Part shown: positions 138 through 63,545 of the stretch, in pieces
How the letters are laid out: every line of letters starts with the position of its first letter
Numbering within the stretch: the stretch's first letter is position 1
Assembly (NCBI GenBank): GCA_965649765.1
Contig: OZ287748.1
Coordinates: forward strand, 13,640,001-13,704,000
Length of the DNA stretch: 64,000 bases
Direction of reading: 5' to 3'
Source of the DNA: Bispira polyomma
Lineage: Eukaryota
Translations under genes and position numbers: made by a program
The notes under the pieces: model-generated
What the model saw: the letters and a program-made list of their open reading frames with translations, nothing else
Databases searched by the model: none
What the model was told of the DNA's origin: nothing

Positions 138-960
138 TTAAGTCAGGTGGACAATGTGTTGTGCAGAGACTACAGGACCTAAGGAAAAATCTGCATCATC
201 CCTAGATTGCCAAGCTACATCTTTCAAGTAGAAGTTAGTAAAGGTGTTATGTGACTTCCAGAAGCAAGCTCCCAGTATCTGGTCTAAAGAGACCCCCCCT
301 TTAAAGGCCAATGAGGCCGCCATGGATCTCAAATCGTGGGCCTTAACTTGACACAGATTTTCAATTTCCGTGTCAGCATGCTGGTAGGCTAAGATGATGA
401 TTTGCTTAAGCCAGGATGAGATAGTACTGGAGAGGGAGCTACTGTGACCTCTTTCCAGTGTGGTTTATGTTTGAGTGATTTAAAGGTCCAGGCATGTATT
501 TCACCTCTTCTTTTGCCAGAGGCTAAGGCCATCAAAAATACTGTTTTGAAGGTAACAAGTTTCAGGGAAGCCTCTTTGATTGGTTCAAAAGGAGGCTTAG
601 TTAAAGCCAGTAGTACCAATGAAAGATCCCAACTAGGTATACCTCTGTCTTTGGTAGGTTTGTCCCTATAAAAACTGGCTAGAAGTCTGTTCAGATCAAG
701 ATTTTTGAGACTTCTAGTCCTGAGGTGCCCAAATGGTCTGCAATAGCAGTTTGGTATCCCGCAATTGTAGCAGGTTTGCGATTTCGTTTCTGAAACAGGA
801 ATACTAAGAAATCTGCTATTTGAGCTATATTAGCTGAGGAGCTGACCACCTTATTCTCTGAAGCCCATTGTTCAAATAAGGCCCACCTTGATTCATACAC
901 TTGTCTAGAGGATGGTCTCTGAGGTGCCTTAATTCGTTCTTCCACTGATCTGGAATACTG
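138..960 (-). pseudogene. DIRS tyrosine recombinase, frameshifted
   Basis: KTVFLMALASGKRRGEIHA; AHDLRSMAASLAF; WKSHNTFTNFYLKD (R, HxxR, W, Y catalytic set). Confidence 0.88.
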
Positions 961-2850
961 GGATTCTGTTGGCATGGAGATTCCAGTATCCAGACATGGA
1001 GATTTAGATATGGCAGGTTTTGGTGATATTGGAAGCCGAATGGTTGCTTTAGCAGAAGAGGCCACTGAGGTAATAGGAGTGGTGGTCTTATTGATAGGTC
1101 CACTAGATCCCAAAACCATGTCATCTCCGGCCATCCTGGAGCTAAGACCATTATTCGACACTGGTAAGTTATGATTTTCTGAACCAGCTTGGGTAAAAGA
1201 GGTACTGGACAAAAGGCATAGCCGTCCAGACCCTCCCAGGAGATGTTCAATGTATCTACCTCCAGGGCATGGGCATCTGGTATTGGGGACACATACAGAG
1301 GTAGCTTGTGATTTTTGGATGTGGCAAACAGGTCTACTTGTGGTGTGTATAAGCTTTGACATAGGAGCTTGAACATTTTTGGGTGTAAAGACCACTCGGT
1401 TGGAATTATTTTGTCTTTCCTAGATAGGCTGTCTGCTATCACATTCAGTGACCCCTGTATATGACGGGCTCAAACCCTGATCTTTCTGGGGTTGCAGAAG
1501 GCAAGTATCCGCCAAACCATGAGACACATTTCTAGAGCTCGAATGCCGCCTTGTTTGTTCAGATATGAATTGACGGATGAGTTGTCTGAGGCTATTAGAA
1601 CTCTCTGTTGCCCAAGTTGGTTTTGGAAAGTTTTTAGAGCAAGATATACTGCCTTTAGTTCTAGCAGGTTTATATGTAAGCCTCTTTCTAGACTAGACCA
1701 GTGACCACTGGCGGTCAATTTGCCTAGATGTGCCCACCAACCTATGTTGGATGCGTCTGTGAATAGAAGAAGATTGTGCTCTCTTGGATGCAAATCTTCT
1801 CCTACCATGACATTCAAGGGGTCTTCCCACCATTGAAGATGGTTTCTTAACTGGACTGAAACCGGGATCTGAATGTCCAAAGGCTGGGGATGTTTCCAAT
1901 GGGATTTCAGGTACCACTGGCAAGGTCTCATATGTAGCCTGCCAAAGGGTACTGCTTTTTCCATGCTGGCCATCAAAGGACATTAGTATTCTGGGAGTAA
2001 TGACCTTGGAGTTTTTGACCTTGTTCACTAGTAGTAAGAGTTTTGACCATTTCTTTTTGGTTGGTGCGACTAGGCTCGCCTTTAAATCGAAATGGTACCC
2101 CAGGAAATCGATAACTTGAGTGGGCTGGAGTTCTGACTTTTTGAAATTGATTAGCCAGCCCATTTGTTGTACTACTGAAACCATCTTTGGTATCTGGATT
2201 CTGCTTTTTTCGAGAGATGGGGATCGAATTAACGTCTATGTACTGGTGAATTCTGATTCCTTGTGATTGGAGTACTAATTTTGTCTCTTTCACGACCCGT
2301 GTAAACTCTAGTGGGGCTGTGGCTATGCCAAACGGAAGCACCTGGAACTGATATGACTGGTGATCGACATTGAAACGCAGGAATCTTTGAGAATTCGGAT
2401 GAATCGGTATATGGAAGTAGGCGTCGGTTAAATCTATGGACGCTACCCACTCCCCTTTTCTCAGTGAACTGCGAATAACCTCTGCTGTCTCCATCTTGAA
2501 TGTTGGGACATGGATATTTCTGTTTAAAACACTCAAATCGATCACTGGCCGCCATTTTTTCAAAGGTTTGGGTACTAGAAATATTCAGCTGTAAAACCCC
2601 AAAGTTGTTGAATGTTTTACCTTGCAAATCGTTCGTTTTTCTAGCATTTGGGCCACACATTCTTTGAGAAACGCTTGCTTCTCTTTGTCTTTGTAACCGC
2701 TCAAAACACCCAGATGTCTGGTTAACGACACTCTGATTTTCGGCAATATTTGGTACCCGTATCTCAGAATTTGCACAACTCGAGGATGGCACTTTAAATT
2801 TTCCCATACCTGCCAGTAGTCTGCTAAGCGGCCCCCACCAGATCCTTGAT
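825..2850 (-). pseudogene. DIRS pol: RT, RNase H and adenine-methyltransferase-like domain, several frameshifts
   Basis: WRPVIDL, IDLTDAYFHIPI, LPFGIATAP, HQYID; LFTDAS, HINLLELKA, SDNSS; ADSLSR..EWSL, VDLFA..NHK, YAFCP, APGWP..WF. Confidence 0.9.
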
Positions 2851-2852
2851 TG

Positions 2853-4403
2853 TCACGTATGCCGCCCACTGCCTTTTCCACCACATGTGCTGTTGGTTTG
2901 ACCCTGGTAACTAGTGGACTTCTTAAAGTCGGTCCCACGCCCTTTCGACCAGTTCTGATTGGGCTTGAAGGTAGTATTTCTACTGTGATAAGTCGGTTGG
3001 TAATTCTGTTTGTTGTAAGCTGATTTAGAATCAGAATACCTGGGTCTTTTTGGAGAAGGTTGTTTAAATCTGGCTTTAGCTTGTTTCTTCTCGATATCAT
3101 TTAAGGTGGTAAGGTTAAAGAGGTCAGAAGTGAGGAAACCTTTCCTCCTGAGTCTATTGGTATCTTGTTCATCAAGGGGCGAACAGCAAGTCTTTAAAAT
3201 AGAATCCCTACGAACTAGTTGCAGGTTGCAAGCCAGGGCGATGGAAGTGTCCACTGTTGTCTCCAGTGCTTTGTCTACCGAACCCAAAATGGCTCCAGCA
3301 ATTTGAAGATTATCGCCCACTTTAATAGTAAGTCTGGTGGCCTCATCTTCCTTCACTAAATCCGCCAAAGCTAGTATGTTAGTGTCAGAATCTAAGAGAG
3401 TCTTGTCTAAAGCCCTTATAAAATGTGATACATAACTCAGTACCTGAACGTTCTCCCTCAAAACAGTTTCCATTTGGGCGACCTGCTTCATTGGAATATG
3501 CACATTATAAGGTTGTGTGGTGTTTTTCGCCATGATGCATTTGAAGGGGTCCTGGCACTTCGGCGCTGTGAGCGAAAATGCATTAGAGGACGATCGGGAG
3601 AACCTCATGGCTGGTCTCGAGTAATTGATAAAACTACCTCTGTTGATGGGCGTAGAATCGAGAACTTCAGTGTTTTTGGGATCGGGACGTCCCGCAGCCA
3701 GGTCTTCATAAAATTTCCAGCGAGACACCACTTCATCAAGTGGAGGCAGAGTGAGGGGAAGTACTGGTGACTTTTTACTTCTATCCCTGTTTCCAAAAAT
3801 TTTAGCAGGTTTGGTGCTGGGATCTGATGGGGTTTCCAATTCCAGCAAAGATCTCACTGTCCCCAATAGTTGCCTATAAGAGGGGTCCTCCTCTTTCTCT
3901 GCCACGTAGTCAGCCTGGTCAGTTGTCTGGTCATCATCCATGGGTGACTCAGATCTCTTCCTTTTATGCCTAGAAGTATGAAAATCTTCTTCTGAATCAT
4001 AGGTTCTACCGAAAGTACTGGTTTTTGAGGCTCTGCCTCTACCTTCTACTTTCTCTAGTCTATCAGATAGTTTACCTAGCTCAGCTAGTATTTGTTGGAG
4101 AGGGTCATCTTTCTTCATAGAAGGTGGAGATTCCTCATCCAGAAGGCTATCATCTGTGGTGTGAGTAGCAGGAAGCTTGTGAAACTTAAGTTTCCAAGCC
4201 TGTAGACATCTGGTCTGGTCAGAAGTCATCTGCATACAAATGTAGCAGTCCTCAGGACTGGAAGTTACACAGACATCAGCCCCAAGCCCCTTGTCTCTGC
4301 ATGTAAGGCAATGACCATGGTGGTCAAAATCGTAGACCTCATGTCCACACTTCGGGGTAATCCTCTGGGTGGAAACGGAAGAATTCAGTTCGTTTTCCGC
4401 CAT
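2853..4403 (-). CDS. DIRS gag-like ORF1 (516 aa) with N-terminal Cys/His zinc-finger-like cluster
   Basis: Open ORF; CGH..DHHGHCLTC...C....CYIC; lies directly 5' of the RT. Confidence 0.8.
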   Translation of the reverse strand: MAENELNSSVSTQRITPKCGHEVYDFDHHGHCLTCRDKGLGADVCVTSSPEDCYICMQMTSDQTRCLQAWKLKFHKLPATHTTDDSLLDEESPPSMKKDDPLQQILAELGKLSDRLEKVEGRGRASKTSTFGRTYDSEEDFHTSRHKRKRSESPMDDDQTTDQADYVAEKEEDPSYRQLLGTVRSLLELETPSDPSTKPAKIFGNRDRSKKSPVLPLTLPPLDEVVSRWKFYEDLAAGRPDPKNTEVLDSTPINRGSFINYSRPAMRFSRSSSNAFSLTAPKCQDPFKCIMAKNTTQPYNVHIPMKQVAQMETVLRENVQVLSYVSHFIRALDKTLLDSDTNILALADLVKEDEATRLTIKVGDNLQIAGAILGSVDKALETTVDTSIALACNLQLVRRDSILKTCCSPLDEQDTNRLRRKGFLTSDLFNLTTLNDIEKKQAKARFKQPSPKRPRYSDSKSAYNKQNYQPTYHSRNTTFKPNQNWSKGRGTDFKKSTSYQGQTNSTCGGKGSGRHT

Positions 4404-5099: not shown

Positions 5100-8000
5100 T
5101 ACTGTCTAGCTGTGATTTTTTACTCTCTATATTTGGTTCTTTTTCTTGCTACTGCTCCTCACCTCTGAGATGTGGAAGTTCTGTTTGACACTTCTCCCGT
5201 GTATGATTCTGGCCGATGTCAGATTACATAAATGGAGCCCCTGCTCTCCATCAAATACACCATTTTTCGACCAATTTGCACTCGGTCCATCTCTGCTAGT
5301 CTCCCTGGATAAGGTAACCACTTCTTTTTTAGCCTTTCAAATTCACAGTACCTGCTGTGCCAACCCCAGGGTTAACAGTATTTGGATCCCTCTGCTGACC
5401 GCTCTCTGTGGAGACGTCAGCATAAATCCTGGCCCCCCTGCATCCATGCTTAACATCGGTGCATTTAATGCCCGTTCCTTGCGACTTAGTCATAGCCCAG
5501 GACCTGGATATTGCTGCCGTCTCCGAGACGTGGATCAGCAGTAGGGATACAACATCTTTTTTGTCGGATATTACTTCTCCGGGTTACAAATTTCTTCAGT
5601 TTCCCAGGTTGCACAAACGCGGGGGAGGAGTTGGCATTTTTGTGAAAAATACCCTTTCCTGTGAAATTCTAAAAAACCAGTCCTACTCGTCTTTCGAACA
5701 CATTTCATGCAAAATTTCAAACGCTTATCACTCATTCCTAGTTTCCTCCTTTTACAGACCACCCATCCCTTCTTTAACTACTTTTACTCAAGAGTTTTCC
5801 GAATTCGTAGAGACCCTTAACCTTCTCCCATTTGAAGCTATCATCCTTGGTGATTTCAACATCAAGCTCGACATAGAAAATACTATGACAAAAGATTTCA
5901 ACACCCTCCTCGACACTTTTGGGTTCTCACAGTTTATCTCCACTTCAACCCACATCCACAATCGCAGGACCAAATTCAAATCTCATCAGAGAACCATGGG
6001 TAACTGATGGGATTTCAGATCACCTAGCAACCTTTGCCTATTTAAATTTATCAATACCTGCCTCACATAAACCTCGTGTCATAAAATACAGAAACATCAG
6101 AAAAATCAATATAAACAAATTTAGAGACGATATCCTGGAAACTAATTTCATCAAACATCCATGCAAAAATGCTGAAAGCCTTAGCTTACAATACAGTCAC
6201 TGCCTTTCTACTGTCCTTGATAAACATGCGCCATGGTTATCTAAAACTCTTCCCCCAACTAACCCCCATGAATGGACCAACGCCGCCATTACAGAGGCCA
6301 AAAGACACAAATGCCAACTTGAGCGTCAATGGCGACGCAAAAAATCCTCCTTAGACAGAAGCCGTTACCATATCACCACAAATAATTACAACAGGCTAAT
6401 AACTGATGCCAAAAAACAACATTACGACTCCATCATCACTGAAAATCAGGATAATCCCAAAAGGTTATGGGCCTCCATAAACAAAATTCTACATCGAACA
6501 TCAGAGAAAGTTCTTCCCATAAACCACTGCCTTACTTTTTTAGCAGAAAAATTTGGAAAATTCTTTTATAGAAAAAATCAGCAACATTCGTGACGCCTTT
6601 CCAACGATACATCACTTCAATCCTCCAGCCCCAGGATATAAGGTTTGTAACCTGTTTTATTTTAGTACACTGTCAGAACTTGAAGTTCTAAAACTCATCA
6701 AATCCTCTACTATTTAATCTTGTGAATTAGATCCCATCCCAGCAGTTATTCTGAGTCAATGTCTTGATATTCTTGTCACACCCATAACAAATATATTAAA
6801 TTTTTCTCTTCGGGATGGTGTTTTTCCCACCTGTTTCAAGACGGCAAATGTAACTCCCTTGATTAAAAAACAAGGGCTTGATAAAAACCAGCTCAAAAAC
6901 TACAGACCGGTGTCAAACCTCAGCTTCGTCTCAAAAGTTATCGAGAAAGCTGTAGCTAAACAAATTTCTGACCACCTTAATAGACAAAACATTGAAAATC
7001 GCCACCAGTCTGTTTATAAAAAATTTCACTCTACAGAAAGTGCCTTTTTTTCCATCAGCAATGATATCAATCTTGCACTGGACCGCAATGACACAGTGGC
7101 CCTCACCCTTCTGGATCTCTCAGCTGCATTCGACACTATTGATCATGTCCTGCTCTGCGACACTCTCAAGCAGTGGTTCGGTATAAATGGTAGTGTCCTT
7201 AAATGGATCAGATCCTACCTTACTCTTAGGGCACAAAGAATTAAACTAGATGATCACCTATCATCTTCCATAAAGCTACCATATGGAGTACCCCAGGGAT
7301 CCGTCCTTGGCCCTCTACTTTTCACCCTTTATACATATCCTCTCAGCACTGTCATCAATAAACACAATATAAAACACCACATGTATGCAGATGACACTCA
7401 AGTCTATCTCTCTCTCAATCCACAAAATGCAAATACTAACATAGACCTACTTGCAGACTGTCTGTCTGATGTCCAGGTGTGGATGAACTATTCCAAACTA
7501 AAGCTTAACCCTGACAAAACAGAATTCATCCTCATAGGAAACAAGAAAAACAGTGAACTCCTAAAATCTTTGTTTCCCATCTCCCTGCTGGGAAAAGACA
7601 TACTACCTTCCGAAAATGCTAAAAACATGGGTGTCACTTTTGATTCAGCTTATTCGTTCGATACCCATATTGCCAACATCTGTCGCTCCTGCTATTACCA
7701 CATATACGACATTAAAAGAATCAGAATCCTCTTGTCCATGGACACAGGGATAACCGTGGCAAATGCCCTTGTGAGTAGCCGCCTCAACTACTGCAATTCT
7801 CTCTTGTACGGAGCAAACAAGTCACACATTAAAAGGCTCCAGTCCATCCAAAACTACCTATGTAGGGTCATTTTTCGCCTGGGTTGTTGCACAGTCACTC
7901 CTTATCTCAAAAAATTACACTGGCTGCCCATTAAATCTCGAATTTTGTTTAAGATTCACATTACCACTTTTAAGGCTGTAGTCATTCAACAGCCACCCTA

Positions 8001-8362
8001 CCTTGCCTCCCTTCTTTCCTTCAGTAACCGCAAGAGAGGCAATAGACTCTCCGTCACTTCGGTCAGACCAATCAGAAAGACGGGATGCAGAGCGTTCTCC
8101 ACTGCAGCTCCATGGTTATGGAACAGTCTCCCAGTTGACCTCAGATCAGTTGACACACTTATTGGTTAGGAAAAAGCTTAAAACCTATCTTTTTAATCTT
8201 GCTTACCCACCTTAGCTTTCCTCGTGCACACTCCCACTTCCTTCCTTACGACTTTGCAATTTCCATGGACTTAATGATTGGACTAATGATTCTGCTGTTG
8301 CGCTTTAGAATATGCCTAGCATCAATAAAGCGCATTAAAAATCTATAATAATAATAATAATT
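5100..8362 (+). mobile_element. L2/CR1-group LINE with near-complete ORF2 (APE + RT), disrupted; 5' boundary uncertain
   Basis: FNARSL, SETW, GGGV, YRPP, GDFN, SDH; [52 protein letters not shown]; (TAA)n tail at 8346-8361. Confidence 0.93.
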
Positions 8363-26249: not shown

Positions 26250-29200
26250 GTTTGTTATCAGCAAAAGCCTCCACAAACCTTCAGAATTAGCATCGGTTTC
26301 CCCGAGCCATTTGACAGACTAGAGTATTTGCAATATGTAGACAAAATAGAACAACATGCTATAAAACATCGCTTAAGTTCTTTTATTATAACACTAATAT
26401 TCTTACCATGCAAATCATGTAAACCATTTGCTTTAGTGACCTTAAGGTTACCTTAACTTATTTAAGATTACTTTTTGTTACAGGTTTATGTTAGACTTAA
26501 GTTGGTTTTTACTAAGAATGGAAAAAAATAAAATTGCCAAACCCAATGTATGTGTAGATATGTAGTGTGGGAAGAGAGGTGCTTATGAAAAGTTTCTGCT
26601 ACTAAACCAGCCGCTGCTGGGGTTTTTACTAAATACCTCCAAATGGCATCCGAAAGCCACCCCGCATGTACCTTTATATATTCTAAATGCACATTGGAGA
26701 CAAAGGCCCAGGAGACCCCCGATCTGCGCAGAGAATGGAATCCAAATTCTGCAGGGGTGAGCCTAATCTTTCTGAGAAAACTAGCTAACACCGACCTGAC
26801 TTTGTAAGCTGAAATGACCACTGTATTCTGGTTTTCCCTATATTGAAATAAAGGAGCTTTATTGCTACCTTTTTTTGGTAATATATCCCTGAGAGCCTGT
26901 ACAGGGCACAGGTTTGAACCTGGCAAAAGAGGAACCTGAACTACCTGCAGCTGTCCAGAATGCTGCATGTTCTTAGAACACTCAGTTATTATGTGAGCCT
27001 CTGGTTTAGCCCAAACAACATCCCCCTGGGTGGGGAACCTAGTGGGGAGAAACTGTGAAGAGGAGGCGGGGACGAGTGTAGCCAACCTATTGAAACCAAA
27101 AAACGCCAGTAAGATTATTGCCTTGTAAACTGGAGCCCCTGGAAACCCTTGTAACAGGTGATCCAGTTGTTGGAGCTTATGGACACTGAAGACCCCTTTG
27201 ACCTTGAACTTAAGGAGGGCATTATTTGCCACTGGCTTTATCATCAAAGTAACCTTTTTATTGGAAAGTGCTCCCAAAGGGAAACCAAACATCTGAAAGA
27301 AATGCCTAATGACTGCCAGATATCCTGAGATTGTTTGTGAGCGCAGCCTTTGCTGTGCGACAAACTCGATAAACAATAATATAGACTGTAGCTCGTAGGG
27401 TGAGGGAAGCTGTAAATGTACCACAAACGCAGTGTAAGGTCGAAACTTGGAAAGGTAGGCTAAGGAGGTTTGCGGACGGAACTCTGTGGCCACCCGAGAG
27501 GTGACACCTTGTAATAGTTGTCTGACTACTGGATTTTCAGCAAATTGTAACATTAAATATCATAATTTGGTATCATCATGTCTTCCCTCACACTGTACCA
27601 GTTGCAAGTCTTCAAGAACTGGACCTCTGTCCTGTCAATATTGCTATAATGATCCCATCTTGATAAAATATCTGCATAAATGTTACTGACCCTGCTAATA
27701 TGCTGGGTGTCAACCTCTATATCGTAATGTGCTTTTATAAGCCATATTGTCCTTGCACAAACATTAAGAAACACGTCACTACTCTTAGCATTGTTTAACA
27801 CATAAACCACCGACATGTTGTCACAGTGTACACATATCTTAGAATCTTTCCATTACTCCCTCCATAAACGAAATGCCACGACGATGTTAACCATTTTGTA
27901 GTGAACTATTGTTAAGGGGCTGTATCCAGTAACTGGTATATTAAGACTATAAACATTATTGTTCCATAACGCGCCCATAGCTCTCGATGAAGCGTCTACA
28001 AAGACATGGTGTGTGGGTATCTGGTTTGTGTGCATAACTGTTCCACCTTTGTAGCAATCTAAGAGCTTACAGAACCAATTTTTACCTTTTTGAAAAGAGG
28101 GGCTTAGATGCACAGACCTATTTAGGGAAGTTCCCCTTAATACAGCCAATATTCTGTTGACAAATAACCTAGCCGGTTTAACACACTGGTGTATGTATAT
28201 CAGTTTTCCTTGTAGTTTTTGTAGGCATTTTCGTGTAGCCCAAGTTCGCTGAGCCCATTCGATACACATGTTCTTTGTGACTTATCCTTTTCATTAAGGC
28301 CAAGGCAATAAGGAGGATTTTAATTGTTCTTAACTGACACCTGGATATAAAATCCCTAAGCCACTCTCCCATGCTATCTATTAAAGTGTCACTACTTAAA
28401 TGAAGTATTGTTACATTATATTGAGAGACAGCCCTAACCTGGTCAACTATATTATCCCTCAGATTACACCTGATGTCCCCAAAGTGGCCCTGCTGTATGG
28501 CCATGCTAACGATAAAAGATAGTTGAGACCTCTCACTTGTGACAGTATCTAGTAAACTATAGGCCCATTGTTCCCCTGTTGAACTTACAGAGCTTGTGTA
28601 GTAACCAAAGTTCTCTAAACTAGTGTTTGACACATTTTAATACTGGGTGAGCCTTAGCTCTGCCCAAGTGAAAATGTATGACTTGCACCCATGTAAATAT
28701 GGTTTATAAGCCTAATATGTGTAAACTATTTGTCCATGTAAATATGGCCCTTGTTTCTAATAGAAGCAAAAGTGCTGTCTAAAGAATTCAGTAATTGATA
28801 TTTGTCCATGTATGTATGGCCCTGTCTTTTATGGGAAGCAGGACGGCTGCCCAGTAAAATGTCTAGATCACATTTGCCCATGTACATATGGTCCTGGTCT
28901 TTAAGGGAAGCCGGACAGCTGCCGATTGAAATTTCATCTTCAATACTACTAATGTTGCAGCCAATTTGTAATTCACACCTATTGACAGCCCTTTTACTCT
29001 GGAAAGTACTACATAAAATACCTTGAGGTCGTTGACTCTTTATACTACTATCAAGGTACATTTCTTCTAACACATGATTATACTGGTGACACTTAATACT
29101 GCCTGCCAGGATAGGTTCACTGTGATAATTAAAACTGTTCATATTCACCCTATTACTAGCTGGTTGAGGAAGTACAAGTCTATAACCAATGGTGGTGTCG

Positions 29201-30660
29201 CAAACGCACCACTGGCAGAAGCAGCAGCCCAGAAGCTTACTACCCCAGAATTTACTACTAAGAATGTCCCAGTCAAAGTGACTGTTTTTGGCTTCCTTAT
29301 TGTATGTGATTTGACTGTGTGTACTTCCCCTAGCCCTGCTAGTAAAATCAAAATTAAACACACTTTTTTCTCTTATCTGTACTGACTGGGCCCTTGCCTG
29401 GTTCCTGTGACTTCCGATTACACTTTATTTACGGATGCTCGTAGTTTTTATTAACCACATGATAGCAATAAGCACAGGAATGCTTTTGAAGTCGGCCCCC
29501 TTCATAATGATTCCCGTCAAACTTGCAAAAGCCCCTAGAGTATTTACCAAATATTGTCACCTTGCCCCCCTGCTCCCTGCTGCTTGTAGCACTGGTGGCG
29601 GGTTTTTGAGTGTTCTTTGCACGAAACACTGGCGAACTCCATCTATGCCGTCGAGATCATCCCAGGATAAGTTTTCCCTTTCGATTTCCGAAAGTATGGC
29701 CGCGTGAACTCTTTTGGCCGTGAGTCAGGAAAGTCTATAGCATCTTGCATTAACAAATATTGATAATGCAGCATATTTTTTTCTAATTTCAACGTCATTT
29801 TCATGTAACATACACCTAGCAAAGCCTTGGACCCACTGAAAAATATTCAAGTCCTCATATGTCGACTCTTTAACACTGGTATCCTTACGTTCTGGCTTTG
29901 GTGAACTGTGTGCTGAGGGTTTTGACTGCATCGAAAGGTCATTGTGTCGGCTGCATTCTTGCCTGGCCATGCGCTCCTCTAGCTGCTGAAACTTGTCCAT
30001 AAAGGGTGTCTAGTTTCACTAACACGTCTGCGTTATTTACCCTTTTCTTGGCTGTGACTTTCTTGGCTGGCTTCGCTTTCGCCCCATTTCCAGAAACTGC
30101 ACCTACGCCTGCTGGTTAGTACCGTGGGGCTCCTCTGTTTGTGACAGCTCCTCGTCCCCCTGTGTATCAACAGTATTGTCTTCAAATTCTGAACATGAGA
30201 GGGCCCCTTCGATGCCCTCCCCACCACAAAGTTCCCCGACTGGGGGCCCATGTGAAGTATTGCATTTAGAGCACTTCCGATTGACACTTCTGGTGTTATA
30301 AACTCTTGGTCGGCCCATACTGTGTAAAGGGCAGTATAATATAAACCGTATCCAAGTGACCAAAATAGTATAAGTTAAGAGAACGGTAATATCACACAAT
30401 TTCCACTAAAATATGTAAATGTTCCTCTCCAATGATAAAAAACACTTTTGTTTCCTTGCAATCAGTTTCCAGAATGAGCCCAATGCTTGACCCCAGCCAG
30501 AAAGAAGGGTTTTTGGCGGGAAACCATTGTGTGAAATTGCAAGTCTCTTAATGAATTGTTTGGTGTGTATTTTAGGTGACACTTATTAGGCAAGGGCTGA
30601 CACTGAACTGACCCAGGAAACTGACGTCTGATGCTGCCCCCCCTCACGCACTCAATTGAT
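26250..30660 (-). mobile_element. Ngaro/DIRS-like YR retrotransposon with the RT core missing; boundaries approximate
   Basis: Gag fragments 29429-30320 (Cys/His knuckles), RT thumb and RNase H 27553-28269 (VDAS, HCDN, ADILSR), YR 26486-27553. Confidence 0.85.
26486..27553 (-). CDS. Tyrosine recombinase of the Ngaro-like element (355-aa open ORF)
   Basis: LLAFFGFNR, LCPVQAL, FHSLRRSG, GWLSDAIWRY. Confidence 0.85.
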   Translation of the reverse strand: MLQFAENPVVRQLLQGVTSRVATEFRPQTSLAYLSKFRPYTAFVVHLQLPSPYELQSILLFIEFVAQQRLRSQTISGYLAVIRHFFQMFGFPLGALSNKKVTLMIKPVANNALLKFKVKGVFSVHKLQQLDHLLQGFPGAPVYKAIILLAFFGFNRLATLVPASSSQFLPTRFPTQGDVVWAKPEAHIITECSKNMQHSGQLQVVQVPLLPGSNLCPVQALRDILPKKGSNKAPLFQYRENQNTVVISAYKVRSVLASFLRKIRLTPAEFGFHSLRRSGVSWAFVSNVHLEYIKVHAGWLSDAIWRYLVKTPAAAGLVAETFHKHLSSHTTYLHIHWVWQFYFFPFLVKTNLSLT

Positions 30661-45311: not shown

Positions 45312-45651
45312 GATACATCATCATTTATAAATGTGTACACTCCATCACAGGTGAAGTGGCCTAAATTACAAATACATAATTCGTTATAAATGTGTACACT
45401 CCATCACAGGTCAAGTGGCCTAAATTACAAATACATCATCACTTATAAATGTGTAGACTCCATCACAAGTTCAAGTGGCCTAAATTACAAATACGTCATC
45501 AGTTATAAAGGTGAACACTCCACCACAAGTTAAGTGGCCTAAATTACAAATACATCATCAGTTATAAATGTGTACACTCCATCACAGATTCAAGTGGCCT
45601 AAATTACAAATACTTCATCAGTTATAAAGGTGGATACACCATCACAGGTTC
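45312..45651. repeat. 59-60-bp minisatellite, ~5.7 copies
   Basis: tacatcatcagttataaatgtgtacactccatcacaggttcaagtggcctaaattacaaa. Confidence 0.95.
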
Positions 45652-51225: not shown

Positions 51226-52303
51226 TCCTTTGTGTCTGAAACTTTAACAACACTCGATGGAAGTGAGTCTTGGGTTGAAACTTGTCCTGATTATTCCATC
51301 TGTATCATATATATGTATTGTATTTGACAATTGATCCTCCACTGACACAATATAACATTTCACTATATATTATTACAGCAGTGTGACCAATTTGGTGAGT
51401 ATATGATTTGTAACATTTAATTTTCAGTTCAGCTGGTTGATTATAATAAAGGGAATTTATCAGGCAAAGACTGTTGCACCACATCAATTGTATGATCAAG
51501 TGGGCAGAAACAAACAAACGATGGCAACATTATGCAAACAGGTAGAGGAAATCAATTGCTAATTAAAACTAGAGCTCTGTAAATAAAAAGATCTTATTGC
51601 CATTTTAGAGGTTTGGAACATAGACTATTGGTGAAAATGTGTGTAATTTGTTCTGTAGGTAGACCTCTTCCACTGGTCATTATACAAACTGTAATTGATG
51701 GTGTTATCCTGTGATACTCTAAATTACACATTGGTAAATTTGTAAGACCAACTAGGTCTATTTTTAAATACAGTTTCTTCTAGAAGATTGTTGTAGGTGT
51801 TCTCCATTGACACGTTTACATATTGTTCGATATGGGCATTATCTCATAGAATTATCTCAACAAAAGCGACCATGAAATAACTATTTTGCATATGATATTT
51901 TTTATAATTGCCATTGCAAGATATACCTTTCACATCCATGATACAATCTATATTTGTAAAGTATAAACAATGTAAAAATCATTAATGTTTTAACATCACA
52001 TAAAAGTTAATATTGTGGAACTTATAACCTTGAAAATGTGTCTTAAAATCAATAAAACACAAAATAAGTTTTCATGATAATATTATTTCTTTTGTATATT
52101 TAATCTTTTATATATCTTATAACGGTATTAAAACAACATGTACTAATAAACTACATTACATTTTATAATAGAAAACATTTATTACAGTGAAACAAATAAA
52201 TAGGTACTGTACTAGTATTAGATTTACTACATTACATAGAGAATGTCAAAATAATAGCAGAACAGAGAGAGAGAGATTGATATAGCAGAAATGCAAGCAA
52301 TCA

Positions 52304-53579
52304 TTAATGGACCACACCATTAGTCAGATGATACTGTTGTGTATCCACTATCACACTTGTATAGCCTGGCTGGGGCATTATGGGATGATAGTTCATACAG
52401 CTGTCCATCATGGAGGGATTAGAACAGTATTTATATCTGCCGTAAGTGTCGTATGTGCCACTACAACTGTTTAGTTCAGATTCACACCCAATGTCCCCAT
52501 TCTTTTCACTTACAGTTCTTCTACCTGGGTACAGCTGGTCTTCATCTGCTATATCATCTTCATCATCATCCTTACCTGCCAAAGCACACGGTAGCTCGGG
52601 TAAACTTCTCTTCTTGATGACCGAGTGCTGTATAGCAATCTGGCGACATGAAGATTTGGACTCTGTCATGTAACTATAGGTGTCTGAGTCTTTTTTGCAA
52701 GAGGATAAGCTTTTAGGTTCACCTTGGACTTGCTTCATTAAGGAATGGTCTCTACTAGTGCTGGAATTTTGAGCTTTTGAGCATGATGCTATCTGCTGCT
52801 GCTGTTGACATTCTTGAAGTAGACAATCCGCTGGTGGAGAACACGATATACTACTGGCTAAGGGTTCCGGTGTACCCAAAGAGTTATTCAGTTTTATTTC
52901 ACTTCTAAGAGGGATGTTACTATTTGGCACCTGGGGAAACGGATGTCTGCTACTATTGGCCTGTGCACATGGTTCAAACTGGTAATCTGAATCTACTGAA
53001 CCACATTCAGACTGTCTTTTGGATGAAGGATCTGTGATACTAGGACTTTCCATGTTTCTCATAGTGTCTGGTACACTGTGAAATGCATTTGTGGTATTGT
53101 AATAATTTGCATATGGGTTCATAGCGTCTCGTGGATCTCGGGAGAAGAACTTGTCTTCACACTGCATGCTATGACCAGCCATGTCCTCATAATACTTCTG
53201 ACTATTGCCGTAAGCGTACATCCCAAAAGGGTCGCCATACATGGAGTGAGGATGGGGGTAGGCATGGGTGTTGTTATACCAGATAAAGTGGCCAGTATCT
53301 GTCGAAGATTCAGGTGTAGGTGTACCACTGAAATAGCCATTTTCAGGTTTCTGAGATGGTTGAGATTCTAAGGATGGTTGAGGATGATCGTACATCTGTT
53401 CAGCTGGTGGCAATTCGGACTGTGATGTTAAGCTGACCGGATATGGAGACCGTCTGGATTTAGACCGGCTGACCTTGGTTTTTCCTGATTTTGGGGGCTC
53501 TTTACAGGCCACCATAGCTGTTTCCTCTTTAGGTAGGGTCTGCTCTAGCTGAAGTTTGAGATCTTTAGCTTCCATGCCA
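52304..53579 (-). CDS. sim: single-minded, last coding exon (C-terminal region)
   Basis: ttacag|T GGC ATG (phase 2); EAKDLKLQLEQ, SRSKSRRSPYP and terminal GYTSVIVD match SIM-family motifs; TAA stop. Confidence 0.93.
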
Positions 53580-54220
53580 CTGTAAGTAGAATAAAGAAAT
53601 TGTAAAATACTAGTATCTGGGTTGTACTTAGTGGATAACTACAATATATGTACTTAGCATATTCATAAAGCAAGTTAAACTAGATGTGAAAGATATCAAA
53701 CATTAGGCATTTATCTTAAATATTTAGAGCTCTCTAATTTTGTACCAGCCAAATTCACCAATCCCAACATAAAGTTTAGTTTCTAAACTCTGACATAAAT
53801 ATACAAGTTGTGTTGTAAGTACTCAACATCTGTTGGGAAGGTAAAAGTCTTAGGATGGGAAGCCTTGTTAAAAGAATCAGTAAAACTTTGGACCCATTTC
53901 TGGTCAAACAAGTGAATTAGCAGCAGAAACATCTATATCAAGAACAAACATCCCTGAAGTCCATCATTGTACAAAGTTACATTACTTTCAACATATCGAT
54001 GGATCTTATTTGTTTTGTCAATGTTGCCCAAGGTTAAACATATGCATTAACAAAATAACAATTGTTCTCTGATGAATAAACTGATTCTCAACAGTTTGAA
54101 ACATCACTATTTGAATTAGGTTGGTAATAGGTTATTTTGAGAATGTGAATAAACAGTATTTTATGAAGAATGTTTCAAATATCATTTTTTTTTCTGAATA
54201 CGTTTATGGTTACATTATAC

Positions 54221-55677
54221 CATGGTTGATGCTAACTTTACATTGTGACTTCTGTCTCTTACCTTATAACGTGGTTAATGCTGACTATACACAATGACTT
54301 CTGTCTCTTACCTCATCACATGGTTGATGCTGACTATACACAATGACTTCTGTCTCTTACCTCATCACATGGTTAATGCTGACTATACACAATGACTTCT
54401 GTCTCTTACCTCATCACATGGTTAATGCTGACTATACACAATGACTTCTGTCTCTTACCTCATCACATGGTTGATGCTGACTATACACAATGACTTCTGT
54501 CTCTTACCTCATCACATGGTAAATGCTGACTATACACAATGACTTCTGTCTCTTACCTCATCACATGGTTAATGCTGACTATACACAATGACTTCTGTCT
54601 CTTACCTCATCACATGGTTAATGCTGACTATACACAATGACTTCTGTCTCTTACCTCATCACATGGTTAATGCTGACTATACACAATGACTTCTGTCTCT
54701 TACCTCATCACATGGTTGATGCTGACTATACACAGGGACTTCTGTCTCTTATCTCATCACATGGTTAATGCTGACTATACACAATGACTTCTGTCTCTTA
54801 CCTCATCACATGGTTAATGCTGACTATACACAATGACTTCTGTCTCTTACCTCATCACATGGTTAATGCTGACTATACACAATGACTTCTGTCTCTTATC
54901 TCATCACATGGTTAATGCTGACTATGCACAGGGACTTCTGTCTTTTACCTCAGCACATGGTTGATGCTGACTTTACACAGTGACTTCTATCTCTTACCTC
55001 ATCACATGGTTAATGCTGACAATACACAATGACTTCTGTCTCTTACCTCATCACATGGTTGATGCTGACTTTACACAGTGACTTCTGTCTCTTACCTCAT
55101 CACATGGTTAATGCAGACAATACACAATGACTTCTGTCTCTTACCTCATCATATGGTTGATGTTGACTTTACACAGTGACTTCTATCTCTTACCTCATCA
55201 CATGGTTAATGCTGACAATACACAATGACTTCTGTCTCTTACCTCATCACATGGTTAATGCTGACAATACACAATGACTTCTGTCTCTTACCTCATCACA
55301 TGGTTGATGCTGACTATACGATGCAGACTATACACAATGACCTCTATCTCTTATCTTATTACATGGTTAATGCTGACTATACACAGTGACTTCTGTCTCT
55401 TACCTCATCACATGGTTAATGCTGACTTTACACAGTGACTTCTGTCTCTTACCTCATCACATGGTTAATGCAGACTATACACAATGACTTCTGTCTTTTA
55501 CCTCATCACATGGTTGATGCTGACTATACACAGTGCCTTCTATCTCTTACCTCATCACATGGTTAATGCTGACTATACACAGTGACTTCTGTCTCTTACC
55601 TCATCACATGGTTAATGCTGTCAATACACAATGGCTTCTGTCCCTTACCTTATTACATGGTTGATGCTGACTATACA
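54221..55677 (-). repeat. 49-bp minisatellite made of the sim exon 3' end (29 bp) plus the 5' splice site and intron start (20 bp); 29 units including the real junction
   Basis: Minus-strand unit GTAAGAGACAGAAGTCATTG-TGTATAGTCAGCATTAACCATGTGATGAG. Confidence 0.96.
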
Positions 55678-55796
55678 GTGTGGTCGTGATGATCTACTGT
55701 TGTGTACTATAGTGGCCTGACTCTGCATCCACACCCAGCCTCCGTCTTTAGCCAGAAAACGGTAATACTTGGTGGTGACCTGTCCTTTTAGGAGAA
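55649..55796 (-). CDS. sim: single-minded exon: PAS-B/PAC ([48 protein letters not shown])
   Basis: Closely matches the SIM1/SIM2/sim PAC region; ccag|TT...AG|gtaagg, 148 bp. Confidence 0.97.
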
Positions 55797-55954: not shown

Positions 55955-57263
55955 CCCTTTGGACCCCTGTGTTTGTTGGCTAACAGTCGACGACATTTGT
56001 TACTCCCACAACCTTTGTCTGTTGGCAGGCAGTCGACACCCCAAAAATATTATTTTATTTTTCTTTAGTTCCTCGCAATAGGGCATTGTTAGTACAACAG
56101 AACCTCCCGTTTACCAAATTATATGTGAGGCCGCTATTGAATGCCCATAGTAGTCTGTGGTGTGCTTGTTTAGTGCTATTTTAATACCCATAATAGTCTG
56201 TGGTGTGTGTGTTTAGTGCTATTGAAGGCCTATAGTAGTCTGCGGTGTGCTTGTTTAGTGCTATTGAATGCCCATAGTAGTCTGTGGTGTGCTTGTTTAG
56301 TGCTATTGAATGCCCATAGTAGTCTGTGGTGTGTGTGTTTAGTGCTATTGAATGCCCATAGTAGTCTGTGGTGTGCTTGTTTAGTGCTATTGAATGCCCA
56401 TAGTAGTCTGTGGTATGCTTGTTTAATGCTATTGAATGCCCATAGTAGTCTGTGGTGTGTGTGTTTAGTGCTATTGAATGCCCATAGTAGTCTGTGGTGT
56501 GTGTGTTTAGTGCTATTAAATGCCCATAGTAATCTGTGGTGTGTGTGTTTAGTGCTATTAAATGCCCATAGTAGTCTGTGGTGTGCTTGTTTAGTGCTAT
56601 TGAATGCCCATAGTAGTCTGTGGTATGCTTGTTTAATGCTATTGAATGCCCATAGTAGTCTGTGGTGTGTGTGTTTAGTGATATTGAATGCCCATAGTAG
56701 TCTGTGGTGTGTGTGTTTAGTGCTATTAAATGCCCATAGTAATCTGTGGTGTGTGTGTTTAGTGCTATTAAATGCCCATAGTAGTCTGTGGTGTGTGTGT
56801 TTAGTGCTATTAAATGCCCATAGTAGTCTGTGGTGTGTGTGTTTAGTGCTATTAAATGCCCATAGTAGTCTGTGGTGTGTGTGTTTAGTGCTATTAAATG
56901 CCCATAGTAGTCTGTGGTGTGTGTGTTTAGTGCTATTGAATGCCCATAGTAGTCTGTGGTGTGTGTGTTTAGTGCTATTGAATGCCCAAAGTAGTCTGTG
57001 GTGTGTGTGTTTAGCGCTATTAAATGCCCATAGTAGTCTGTGGTGTGTGTGTTTAGTGCTATTAAATGCCCATAGTAATCTGTGGTGTGTGTGTTTAGTG
57101 CTATTAAATGCCCATAGTAGTCTGTGGTGTGTGTGTTTAGTGCTATTGAATGCCCATAGTAGTCTGTGGTGTGTGTTTTAGTGACTGCAGCTATCTGTAA
57201 CCTATTACCAAAATTTCTTTTACTCTAGTTCCCCGCGATAGTTTTCTTTTAAGGTAGAAAGGG
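55955..57263. mobile_element. piggyBac-like MITE containing an expanded 42-bp minisatellite
   Basis: TTAA|CCCTTTGGACC ... GGTAGAAAGGG|TTAA; flanks colinear with 9070-9382. Confidence 0.85.
56133..57183. repeat. 42-bp minisatellite, ~25 copies
   Basis: gctattgaatgcccatagtagtctgtggtgtgtgtgtttagt. Confidence 0.97.
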
Positions 57264-57543: not shown

Positions 57544-57650
57544 GTGTGTGATGTGCGTATCTGAGGTGTAATATATCACAGGCGTGGACATAATGGTAGA
57601 GGGTTTTCTCTATCAGATCTTGAGGTTCATAGCCAGTAAGAGCAGCAACT
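57544..57650 (-). CDS. sim: single-minded exon: PAS-B ([35 protein letters not shown])
   Basis: [15 protein letters not shown] is characteristic of SIM; ttcag|A...C|gtaagt, 107 bp. Confidence 0.97.
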
Positions 57651-58963: not shown

Positions 58964-59163
58964 CTGGCATCCAAAAAGATGAGTTTGAGATCGAGGCTGG
59001 CCCTGAACATGAACATGTTGCTGTACATCTTGACCTCTGTGATGGAGCTGGTGGGGAGAGAGTGTCCAACGGCAACCATCCCCATATTCTGATAGCAACC
59101 TTCAAACGGGGTCATGTCTAGACCGTACTGCTTGACCTTGAGGAAGCCACTGCAGTGAATAAC
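58964..59163 (-). CDS. sim: single-minded exon ([13 protein letters not shown]...[16 protein letters not shown]...[18 protein letters not shown])
   Basis: SIM-family sequence; ttag|GTT...AG|gtatta, 200 bp. Confidence 0.97.
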
Positions 59164-61099: not shown

Positions 61100-61185
61100 C
61101 TTATAGCCCCCAGAAGTCAACCCTGCGTTTCTCTTAGCCAAGACACACTTCATTCTGATGAAGAAAGATTTTTCTATTTCATAAT
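61100..61185 (-). CDS. sim: single-minded exon ([28 protein letters not shown])
   Basis: [14 protein letters not shown] is characteristic of SIM; ttcag|AT...AAG|gtatta, 86 bp. Confidence 0.97.
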
Positions 61186-62632: not shown

Positions 62633-63545
62633 CCATTTCGACACCAAGCACCAATTCGAATCGGCACCCGCTGAAAGTTGTGCTGCTTTGAACCCAACCC
62701 CAGTGCTTACTTGGCGTGGCCGTTTTAACACCAAGGAATAAACGTTTAAGATTTATTCTAATTAAATTACTACTTTTTGCTTGATTTTAACCAATAAGGT
62801 ATCATTTTAAAGTGTACAACGCAAGGAAATCTGCCATGGTTACAACTGATAGATCGAAGAAATACACAGCAAATCACAATTAAAATGAATTTAATTAAAT
62901 TTAAATTCAATTTTTCAGCTGGTTATTAACATAAGTTTAACAAAGATTTACTTAATAAACCAGCTATAATTATGTCATATTAATATCTCTGTGTATTAAG
63001 TTTCAAAATGATACCTAATTTGTTAAAATCAAGCAAGAAATGATGATTATACTAAAATAAACCTAAACCATTTTTTCTTTGGGTGTCAAAACGGCCACGC
63101 CAAGTAAGCACCAATGAAATGAAAATGAAATAGTACATTTGTTATAGCGCACTTATAGGGTCCTTTCAAATGCGCTTCCTTATGGGCAGCCACTATGGCT
63201 TGAGGATGACCATTTATCAACGTCCCCAAGGATCTTTAATCTGCCACTGAGGATATTACTCTGTGGATATGACCACCATGCCACTGAGGATATTACTCAG
63301 TGACAGAGGACCGCCATTTTAAGTGGTCATCTGAACCACTAGGCAAACTTGTGTTCACATCTTGCATAAGGATGTTATCCCACCAAGTGAAACTAGCGGC
63401 CAGTACCAGGACTTGAACCGGGGACCTTCTGATCATCAGACCAACGCCCTAACCACTAGACCACGGGGGGATCACCAATGCAAATATATGAGGGTGTTAA
63501 AACGGCCCCCTAGCCGATTCGAAACCGCAAGGGTGTCGAAATGCC
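62633..63545. mobile_element. Foldback element (inner arms 62703-62810 and 63004-63111) with a SINE inserted in the right arm
   Basis: gtgcttacttggcgtggccgttttaacacc versus ggtgtcaaaacggccacgccaagtaagcac; outer catttcgacacc/ggtgtcgaaatg and ttcgaatcggc/gccgattcgaa. Confidence 0.65.
63114..63470 (-). mobile_element. tRNA-derived SINE, best-preserved copy, with a small internal duplication
   Basis: A box tggtctagtgg, B box ggttcaagtcc, L2-like tail gcgc...gcgctataacaaat then (CATTT)n. Confidence 0.88.

What the first reader, a model, noticed from the sequence alone, without database searches (positions are those of the whole stretch)
54221..55677. Splice-donor minisatellite: the sim PAC exon end and its 5' splice site are tandemly amplified 28 times
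Seen: the 49-bp unit is the last 29 nt of the sim exon (encoding CIVSINHV[I/M]) plus the first 20 nt of the intron. I count 29 junction copies at 49-bp spacing (one 63-bp step) from 55648 (authentic AAG|GTAAGG) to 54262. Of the 28 extra copies, 25 keep GT, mostly GAG|GTAAGA; three (near 54752, 54899 and 55354) are GT->AT. Reading past the true donor gives AG-G TAA, an immediate stop. Established: SIM has an N-terminal bHLH-PAS dimerisation module and a C-terminal regulatory region; EJC-dependent NMD needs a stop more than ~50-55 nt upstream of the last junction. Inference: any decoy donor truncates Sim right after PAC. The first decoy leaves the stop only ~45 nt from the final junction, so it could escape NMD and give a dominant-negative-like protein, while distal decoys would feed NMD. 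Copy number could thus act as a heritable dial on sim dosage or isoforms, or as a U1 snRNP sink. It may also be a neutral slippage product.
Basis: partly seen in the sequence, partly recalled or inferred. Interest (0 to 1): 0.88.

Follow-up and report, generated by a model that had tools for sequence, protein, structure and literature searches.

The report
"Mirage" splice-donor minisatellite in worm sim
The end of one exon of the single-minded gene, with its splice donor, has been copied 28 times into the next intron; this is a known and probably harmless kind of repeat ("mirage") that sits on about a quarter of the exon ends sampled in this worm's genome, so it is unlikely to be a special control dial for sim.

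Summary
The gene is sim. The anatomy is a named kind: amphioxus "mirages" and human donor-spanning minisatellites (F7, CBS, 6-16, LMNB2, PDGF). In those, the most upstream donor is used alone or, in CBS and 6-16, with two pseudo-sites. The array is not special to sim. Seven of 28 myosin exons chosen without regard to repeats carry one (flank background 5%). A bHLH-PAS paralogue has its own 64-bp array at the same PAC junction. A triple-donor pattern is 3.5-fold over its control genome-wide. Three related sim genes lack it, and GT is not conserved above other positions. Best reading: a lineage-specific by-product, tolerated because the first donor wins. The decoys pair with U1 as well as the true donor, so some leak is possible; no RNA run was available to test this. 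The dial or dominant-negative reading is unsupported. The scan has reported this class many times elsewhere in this genome. What stays open is why donors seed such arrays so often.

The parts
54221..55677 (-). 49-bp minisatellite (29 nt exon end + 20 nt intron start), 29 junction copies including the authentic one; a 'mirage'
55649..55796 (-). sim exon (148 nt) encoding the C-terminal half of PAS-B (PAC); its last 29 nt are the first half of unit 1
   Evidence: (PAS_3 E=2e-9)
55643..55651 (-). authentic donor AAG|GTAAGG; first intron base 55648; intron bases +2..+4 form an in-frame TAA
   Evidence: the same intron position in three related sim genes
54262..55599 (-). 28 downstream pseudo-donors, mostly GAG|GTAAGA; GT>AT at 55354, 54899, 54752
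54205..54220 (-). degenerate 30th junction (AAT|GTAACC at about 54213), the decayed distal edge of the array
53580..54220 (-). unique 641-nt 3' part of the intron ending in the acceptor (..TTACAG)
52301..53579 (-). last coding exon of sim (C-terminal region, 424 aa) starting (S)GMEAKDLKLQLEQ; AATAAA at 52183
57544..57650 (-). sim exon, N-terminal half of PAS-B; no array at its donor
58964..59162 (-). sim exon between PAS-A and PAS-B; no array at its donor
   Evidence: named hits 'single-minded-like'
61100..61184 (-). sim exon in PAS-A; no array at its donor

Best explanation
A lineage-specific 'mirage' minisatellite that is a tolerated by-product. (1) A 49-bp stretch across the sim PAC exon end and donor was duplicated in tandem. 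That the unit is junction-derived is shown; slippage at a short CACTGT-like match is inferred and weak. (2) It expanded and was homogenised like any minisatellite: 19 distinct units, one present 7 times in the 3' half, divergent edge units and block repeats (shown). (3) The authentic donor is first in transcription order, so the spliceosome commits to it and the whole array leaves with the intron (inferred from human F7 and from amphioxus RT-PCR; not tested here). (4) Any rare decoy use puts a stop directly after PAS-B, with more than 1.3 kb downstream, probably an NMD substrate. The stop is shown; decay is inferred. (5) This genome makes such arrays at about a quarter of donors, so one of sim's four donors in the window carrying one is what the background predicts (shown on a small sample).
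For: 7 of 28 independent myosin-head exon matches have an array that starts in the exon and runs over its 3' end, against 5.3% of equal windows in the flanks (binomial p=5e-4); 1 of 28 at acceptors. Triple AGGTAAG pattern: 2,811 matches vs 803 for the reversed control; triple TTTTCAG: 520 vs 332. Most of the donor-pattern arrays fetched from the first 13.7 Mb of C1 start at the end of an open frame. Four have clear Pfam hits (helicase locus, VWD, dynein AAA_9, taxilin); a few show no exon. A paralogous bHLH-PAS gene has an independent 64-bp x 19 array at the same PAC donor, and two other paralogues have none. A TPMT exon has a 52-bp x 37 array. No array at this donor in sim of L081 (exon 98% aa identical), L082 or Paralvinella L083. 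Donor +1/+2 changes 3/56 vs 4.1% per position overall, p=0.5. Near-identical gene copies differ in unit number: myosin 12/24/17 with 98.6-99.4% identical flanks and taxilin 21/8. Literature: PMC1557585, PMC3087553, PMC3902484.
Against: No RNA data, so which donor is used was not measured. Decoys pair with U1 almost as well as the true donor and better than sim's other three donors. CBS and 6-16 do use two pseudo-sites besides the authentic one. The scanning rule was shown in mammalian cells, not annelids. Neutrality does not explain why donors carry arrays about five times more often than flanking DNA.
Confidence: 0.72

Rival explanations
1. Leaky but incidental, as in CBS and 6-16: the origin is neutral, but one or two proximal pseudo-donors (such as 55599 and 55550) are used at a measurable rate, giving stop-containing sim mRNA that is mostly degraded and lowers sim output slightly, without selection for it.
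For: U1 duplex -9.6 vs -10.0 kcal/mol. Decoy 1 and 2 exons would be a normal 197 and 246 nt. CBS and 6-16 each use two pseudo-sites (PMC1557585).
Against: F7 pseudo-sites with a consensus value up to 91 do not compete. LMNB2, PDGF and amphioxus Adh and globin use only the true site. With arrays on about 25% of donors, heavy leak would be a genome-wide load.
Confidence: 0.2
2. One reading: copy number is a selected, heritable control of sim dosage, or decoy 1 makes an NMD-escaping dominant-negative bHLH-PAS-only Sim, or the array acts as a U1 sink.
For: The stop falls right after PAS-B and 45 nt before decoy 1, inside the 50-55 nt limit. 25 of 28 copies keep GT. Unit numbers of such arrays change quickly.
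Against: A stop after the donor needs no design, since GTAA contains TAA; the paralogue's GTGAG donor also reads into a stop. The array is absent in three related sim genes. GT retention is at the array's general level. Under first-wins selection, units beyond the first cannot matter. Invertebrate NMD can ignore junctions and respond to long 3' UTRs (PMC4770240). [quoted passage not shown] A U1-sink effect of 25 sites is negligible among the very many such arrays here (inference).
Confidence: 0.06
3. Assembly artefact: the array is over-expanded or does not exist in the animal.
For: Long repeats are hard to assemble, and the runs that hold it may be the assembly's own source.
Against: 19 distinct unit variants in an ordered pattern; unit contigs at about 12-13 times flank depth in three DNA runs, near the expected 12-17.
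Confidence: 0.02

Closest known systems
'Mirage' minisatellites of amphioxus (Adh3, globins BflGb6 and BflGb9, TnC, PGBD5; PMC3087553, PMC3902484)
   Same: Tandem copies of an exon-intron boundary lying in the intron; unit 49 bp, within the 10-72 bp of Adh3; most but not all units keep the splice signal; homogenised centre with divergent edges.
   Different: Here in a probable annelid (best named hit Paralvinella), on about 25% of sampled donors and biased to donors, rather than described gene by gene. Splicing and allelic length variation were not measured here.
Human donor-spanning minisatellites: F7 IVS7 (37 bp x 5-9), CBS IVS13 (15-20 units), 6-16 intron 2 (25 pseudo-sites), LMNB2 (100 bp), PDGF intron 4 (81 bp) (PMC1557585)
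   Same: The first unit spans the exon-intron boundary, so the authentic donor is followed by a row of pseudo-donors; 6-16 has about the same number.
   Different: The sim unit carries more exon (29 of 49 nt; F7 only 4 of 37), and most decoys differ from the true site at -3 and +6. Donor use is known for the human genes and unknown here.
Intron gain by tandem duplication of AG|GT proto-splice sites (Rogers model, as discussed in PMC3087553)
   Same: The unit contains AG|GT.
   Different: No polypyrimidine tract precedes the AG in the units, and the intron position is old and shared with three related sim genes, so no new intron has been made.

Membership tests
mirage / splice-junction minisatellite | Head-to-tail tandem repeat of minisatellite unit size | tested here: met
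   49 bp, about 29.7 units, 91-93% matches
mirage / splice-junction minisatellite | The edge unit spans a real exon-intron boundary of the host gene | tested here: met
   Unit 1 = last 29 nt of a PAS_3 exon + donor; same intron position in related sim genes
mirage / splice-junction minisatellite | Extra copies lie in the intron and many, not all, keep the splice dinucleotide | tested here: met
   25 of 28 keep GT
mirage / splice-junction minisatellite | Concerted evolution inside the array, with divergent edge units | tested here: met
   First and last units differ from consensus at 5-6 positions; one unit type occurs 7 times in the 3' half
mirage / splice-junction minisatellite | Length polymorphism between alleles or cells | not testable with these tools
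   Only short-read contigs of at most two samples; other arrays differ in length between near-identical gene copies
mirage / splice-junction minisatellite | Normal splicing at the authentic site is preserved | not testable with these tools
   No RNA run listed; X4 covers only part of the last exon and no junction
single-minded (Sim) bHLH-PAS gene | PAS exons most like Sim, with Sim exon structure | tested here: met
   Named hits 'single-minded-like' at 77-83%; last exon hits 'single-minded homolog 2-like' weakly; five exons collinear in L081-L083; three paralogues only 47-52% identical
single-minded (Sim) bHLH-PAS gene | N-terminal bHLH domain | not tested
   Presumably upstream of the exons traced here; not looked for
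regulated unproductive splicing (AS-NMD) element | Conserved across related species | tested here: not met
   No array at this donor in L081, L082, L083
regulated unproductive splicing (AS-NMD) element | The stop-containing isoform is made and rises on NMD block | not testable with these tools
   No RNA data

The most novel reading that the evidence does not exclude
In this worm lineage splice donors themselves seed tandem duplication, through a transcription- or spliceosome-coupled mutational process (for example R-loops or U1-bound nascent RNA at the donor). The sim array would then be one of very many footprints of an undescribed link between splicing and genome instability. The excess over flanking DNA (25% vs 5%) and two independent arrays at the same PAC donor in two paralogues allow this but do not show it; local sequence bias plus purging of acceptor arrays remains possible.
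Probability: 0.2. Interest if true: 0.7.

Novelty: new member of a known kind. Interest (0 to 1): 0.25.

Why it matters
As a single locus it matters little: it is one more mirage, with human and lancelet precedents that mostly splice normally. If pseudo-donors were used in proportion to copy number, it would be a natural dosage allele of a developmental regulator, but nothing found supports that. The wider value lies in the genome. With about a quarter of donors followed by near-equal pseudo-donors, this animal is a large natural test of 'first donor wins' outside mammals, and of why such arrays form at donors. The sim array and the paralogue's array at the same PAC donor make a convenient matched pair for that test.

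Tried and rejected
RNA evidence: the look-up of sequencing runs listed no RNA holder. X1-X3 proved to be DNA (contigs run through the intron). X4, another organism, covers only parts of the last exon, with no junction. I did not lay reads on the whole array because the tool turns away long repeats; I laid 52250-54290, which holds only its last unit and a half. The original mirage paper (PMC117041) is not held; it is cited through PMC3087553. MaxEntScan was not available; U1 duplex energy was used instead. Rejected: a dispersed repeat family (the unit's only other genomic hit, 68% identity, is an unrelated donor array at a TPMT exon); intron gain in progress (no acceptor in the unit, old intron position); selection on GT (p=0.5, a naive test because copies are not independent); the 42-bp array in the upstream intron as part of the same element (337-360 bp from either splice site).

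Full report
Observation. On the minus strand the array runs from 55677 to 54221 (TRF score 2347). Cutting it at each junction gives 29 copies with first intron bases from 55648 to 54262, all 49 bp apart except one 63-bp step. Each unit is the last 29 nt of the exon (CIVSINHV[I/M]) and the first 20 nt of the intron. 25 of the 28 extra copies keep GT; 55354, 54899 and 54752 read AT. A decayed 30th junction lies near 54213. The intron has 25 AGGTAA against at most 6 in 1,000 shuffles. In three DNA runs the unique flank is one contig ending at about 54301, and unit contigs are about 12-13 times deeper than it. The commonest 31-mers occur 12-17 times in the assembled array. This fits a real array, with the caveats that contig depth is rough and these runs may be the assembly's source.

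The gene. Five exons were traced: 61184-61100, 59162-58964, 57650-57544, 55796-55649 and 53579-52301. The array exon matches PAS_3 and aligns to the end of PAS-B of HIF-alpha and NPAS structures. The 59162 exon hits proteins named single-minded-like at 77-83%. The last exon's best named hit is from the annelid Paralvinella, with a weaker hit to a bivalve 'single-minded homolog 2-like'. So the gene is sim and the animal is probably a polychaete (inference). Splicing 55649 to 53579 gives ...HVIS-GMEAKDLKLQLEQ. The same two exon ends are found in three related sim loci, which supports both the authentic donor and the acceptor.

What a decoy would do. Reading past the true donor gives Arg-stop. 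Decoys pair with the U1 5' end at -9.6 kcal/mol against -10.0 for the true donor and -5.7 to -7.2 for sim's other three donors, so they cannot be dismissed as weak. But the stop needs no design: GTAA contains TAA, and the paralogue below also reads into a stop. A decoy-1 mRNA would carry more than 1.3 kb after its stop. Drosophila and C. elegans define premature stops without introns, and long 3' UTRs trigger NMD (PMC4770240), so escape by the 50-55 nt rule is unsafe. [quoted passage not shown]

It is one of many. The unit's only other genomic hit was an unrelated 52-bp x 37 array built from a TPMT exon end and donor. Three AGGTAAG at 35-55-nt gaps occur 2,811 times in the genome against 803 for the reversed control; an acceptor-like pattern gives 520 against 332. 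The donor pattern marks about 16 arrays in the first 13.7 Mb of C1. Most of those fetched begin at the end of an open frame, with Pfam support for dynein, VWD, taxilin and a helicase locus, while a few show no exon. In a sample chosen without regard to repeats, 7 of 28 independent myosin-head exon matches have an array starting in the exon and crossing its 3' end, against 5.3% of equal windows in the flanks (p=5e-4). One of 28 has one at the acceptor (donor vs acceptor, Fisher p=0.051). Of four bHLH-PAS paralogues, two have an array at this same PAC donor: sim (49 bp) and L034 (64 bp x 19), with unrelated units. One of four sim donors in the window carries an array, which is the background rate.

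It is recent and behaves like an ordinary minisatellite. The sim genes of L081 (exon 98% identical in protein, 87% in DNA), L082 and Paralvinella have no array at this donor. There are 19 distinct donor-to-donor units, one repeated 7 times in the 3' half, and the edge units are the most divergent. Changes at +1/+2 (3 of 56) are in line with the 4.1% per position elsewhere (p=0.5, naive). Near-identical gene copies elsewhere differ in unit number: myosin 12/24/17 with 98.6-99.4% identical flanks and taxilin 21/8.

What is known. Tandem repeats spanning exon-intron boundaries are called mirages in amphioxus; Adh3 data and globin RT-PCR suggest they do not disturb splicing, and their origin is unclear (PMC3087553; PMC3902484). 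In humans, F7, CBS, 6-16, LMNB2 and PDGF have minisatellites whose first unit spans a donor. F7, LMNB2 and PDGF use only the true site, while CBS and 6-16 also use two pseudo-sites (PMC1557585). F7 mutagenesis showed that pseudo-sites are functional but the most upstream one wins, even against stronger downstream sites. The sim array meets every structural test for this kind that could be run.

Mechanism and verdict. Most likely (0.72) a junction-spanning duplication expanded as a minisatellite and is tolerated because the true donor comes first and the array leaves with the intron. The same logic would purge acceptor arrays, where decoys come first (inference). A small leak to proximal decoys, as in CBS, is the main rival (0.2). 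A selected dial, dominant-negative isoform or U1 sink is unlikely (0.06), and an artefact less so (0.02). Donor use could not be measured: no RNA run was listed. I kept the long repeat out of the reads tool, as its rule requires, and did not join exons into a spliced model. Neutral tolerance does not explain why donors carry arrays about five times more often than flanking DNA; that is the open question, and it belongs to the genome, not to sim. Earlier notes of this scan describe the same class in at least nine other windows of this genome. One gave me the term 'mirage', which I checked in the papers, and my own sample gave a similar rate. Novelty: new member of a known kind; interest 0.25.

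Noticed in passing
L034:359-1560 (G000:C2 near 1,014,195, minus): A class-I bHLH-PAS paralogue has its own 64-bp x 19 donor array at the junction homologous to the sim one; the two other paralogues (L035, L036) have none.
   Followed up: yes
L002:213-2133 (G000:C3 near 20,744,000, minus): 52-bp x 37 array made of a TPMT exon end and its donor; the first copy is AAG|GTGAGG, most later ones AAG|GTAAGG, so the decoys look stronger than the true site.
   Followed up: partly
L055, L056, L057 (C11, C8, C13): Three 98.6-99.4% identical copies of a myosin gene segment on different chromosomes carry 12, 24 and 17 units of the same 53-bp donor array; two taxilin copies (L049, L050) carry 21 and 8 units.
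   Followed up: partly
window 56133-57183: 42-bp x 25 minisatellite in the preceding sim intron, 337-360 bp from both splice sites; it gives a 324-aa repetitive ORF on the + strand that is probably spurious.
   Followed up: partly
window 45313-45650 (+): 59-bp x 5.7 array holding weak donor-like CAG|GTGAAG sites; no convincing coding exon seen upstream.
   Followed up: partly
window 691-4403 (-) and 26486-29361 (-): ORFs that look by eye like two DIRS-type retrotransposon copies (reverse transcriptase, RNase H and tyrosine recombinase pieces); no family search run.
   Followed up: no
window 5146-8169 (+) and 12594-13004 (-): ORFs that look like LINE endonuclease and reverse transcriptase pieces; no family search run.
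   Followed up: no
window about 63395-63475 (-): A tRNA-like sequence in a sim intron, probably the head of a SINE; not tested.
   Followed up: no
L051, L053, L066: Three myosin exons have tandem arrays that end a few tens of bases or less before the acceptor without crossing it.
   Followed up: no
window about 22500-23000: Assembly gap (N) flanked by an inverted repeat; left as it is.
   Followed up: no
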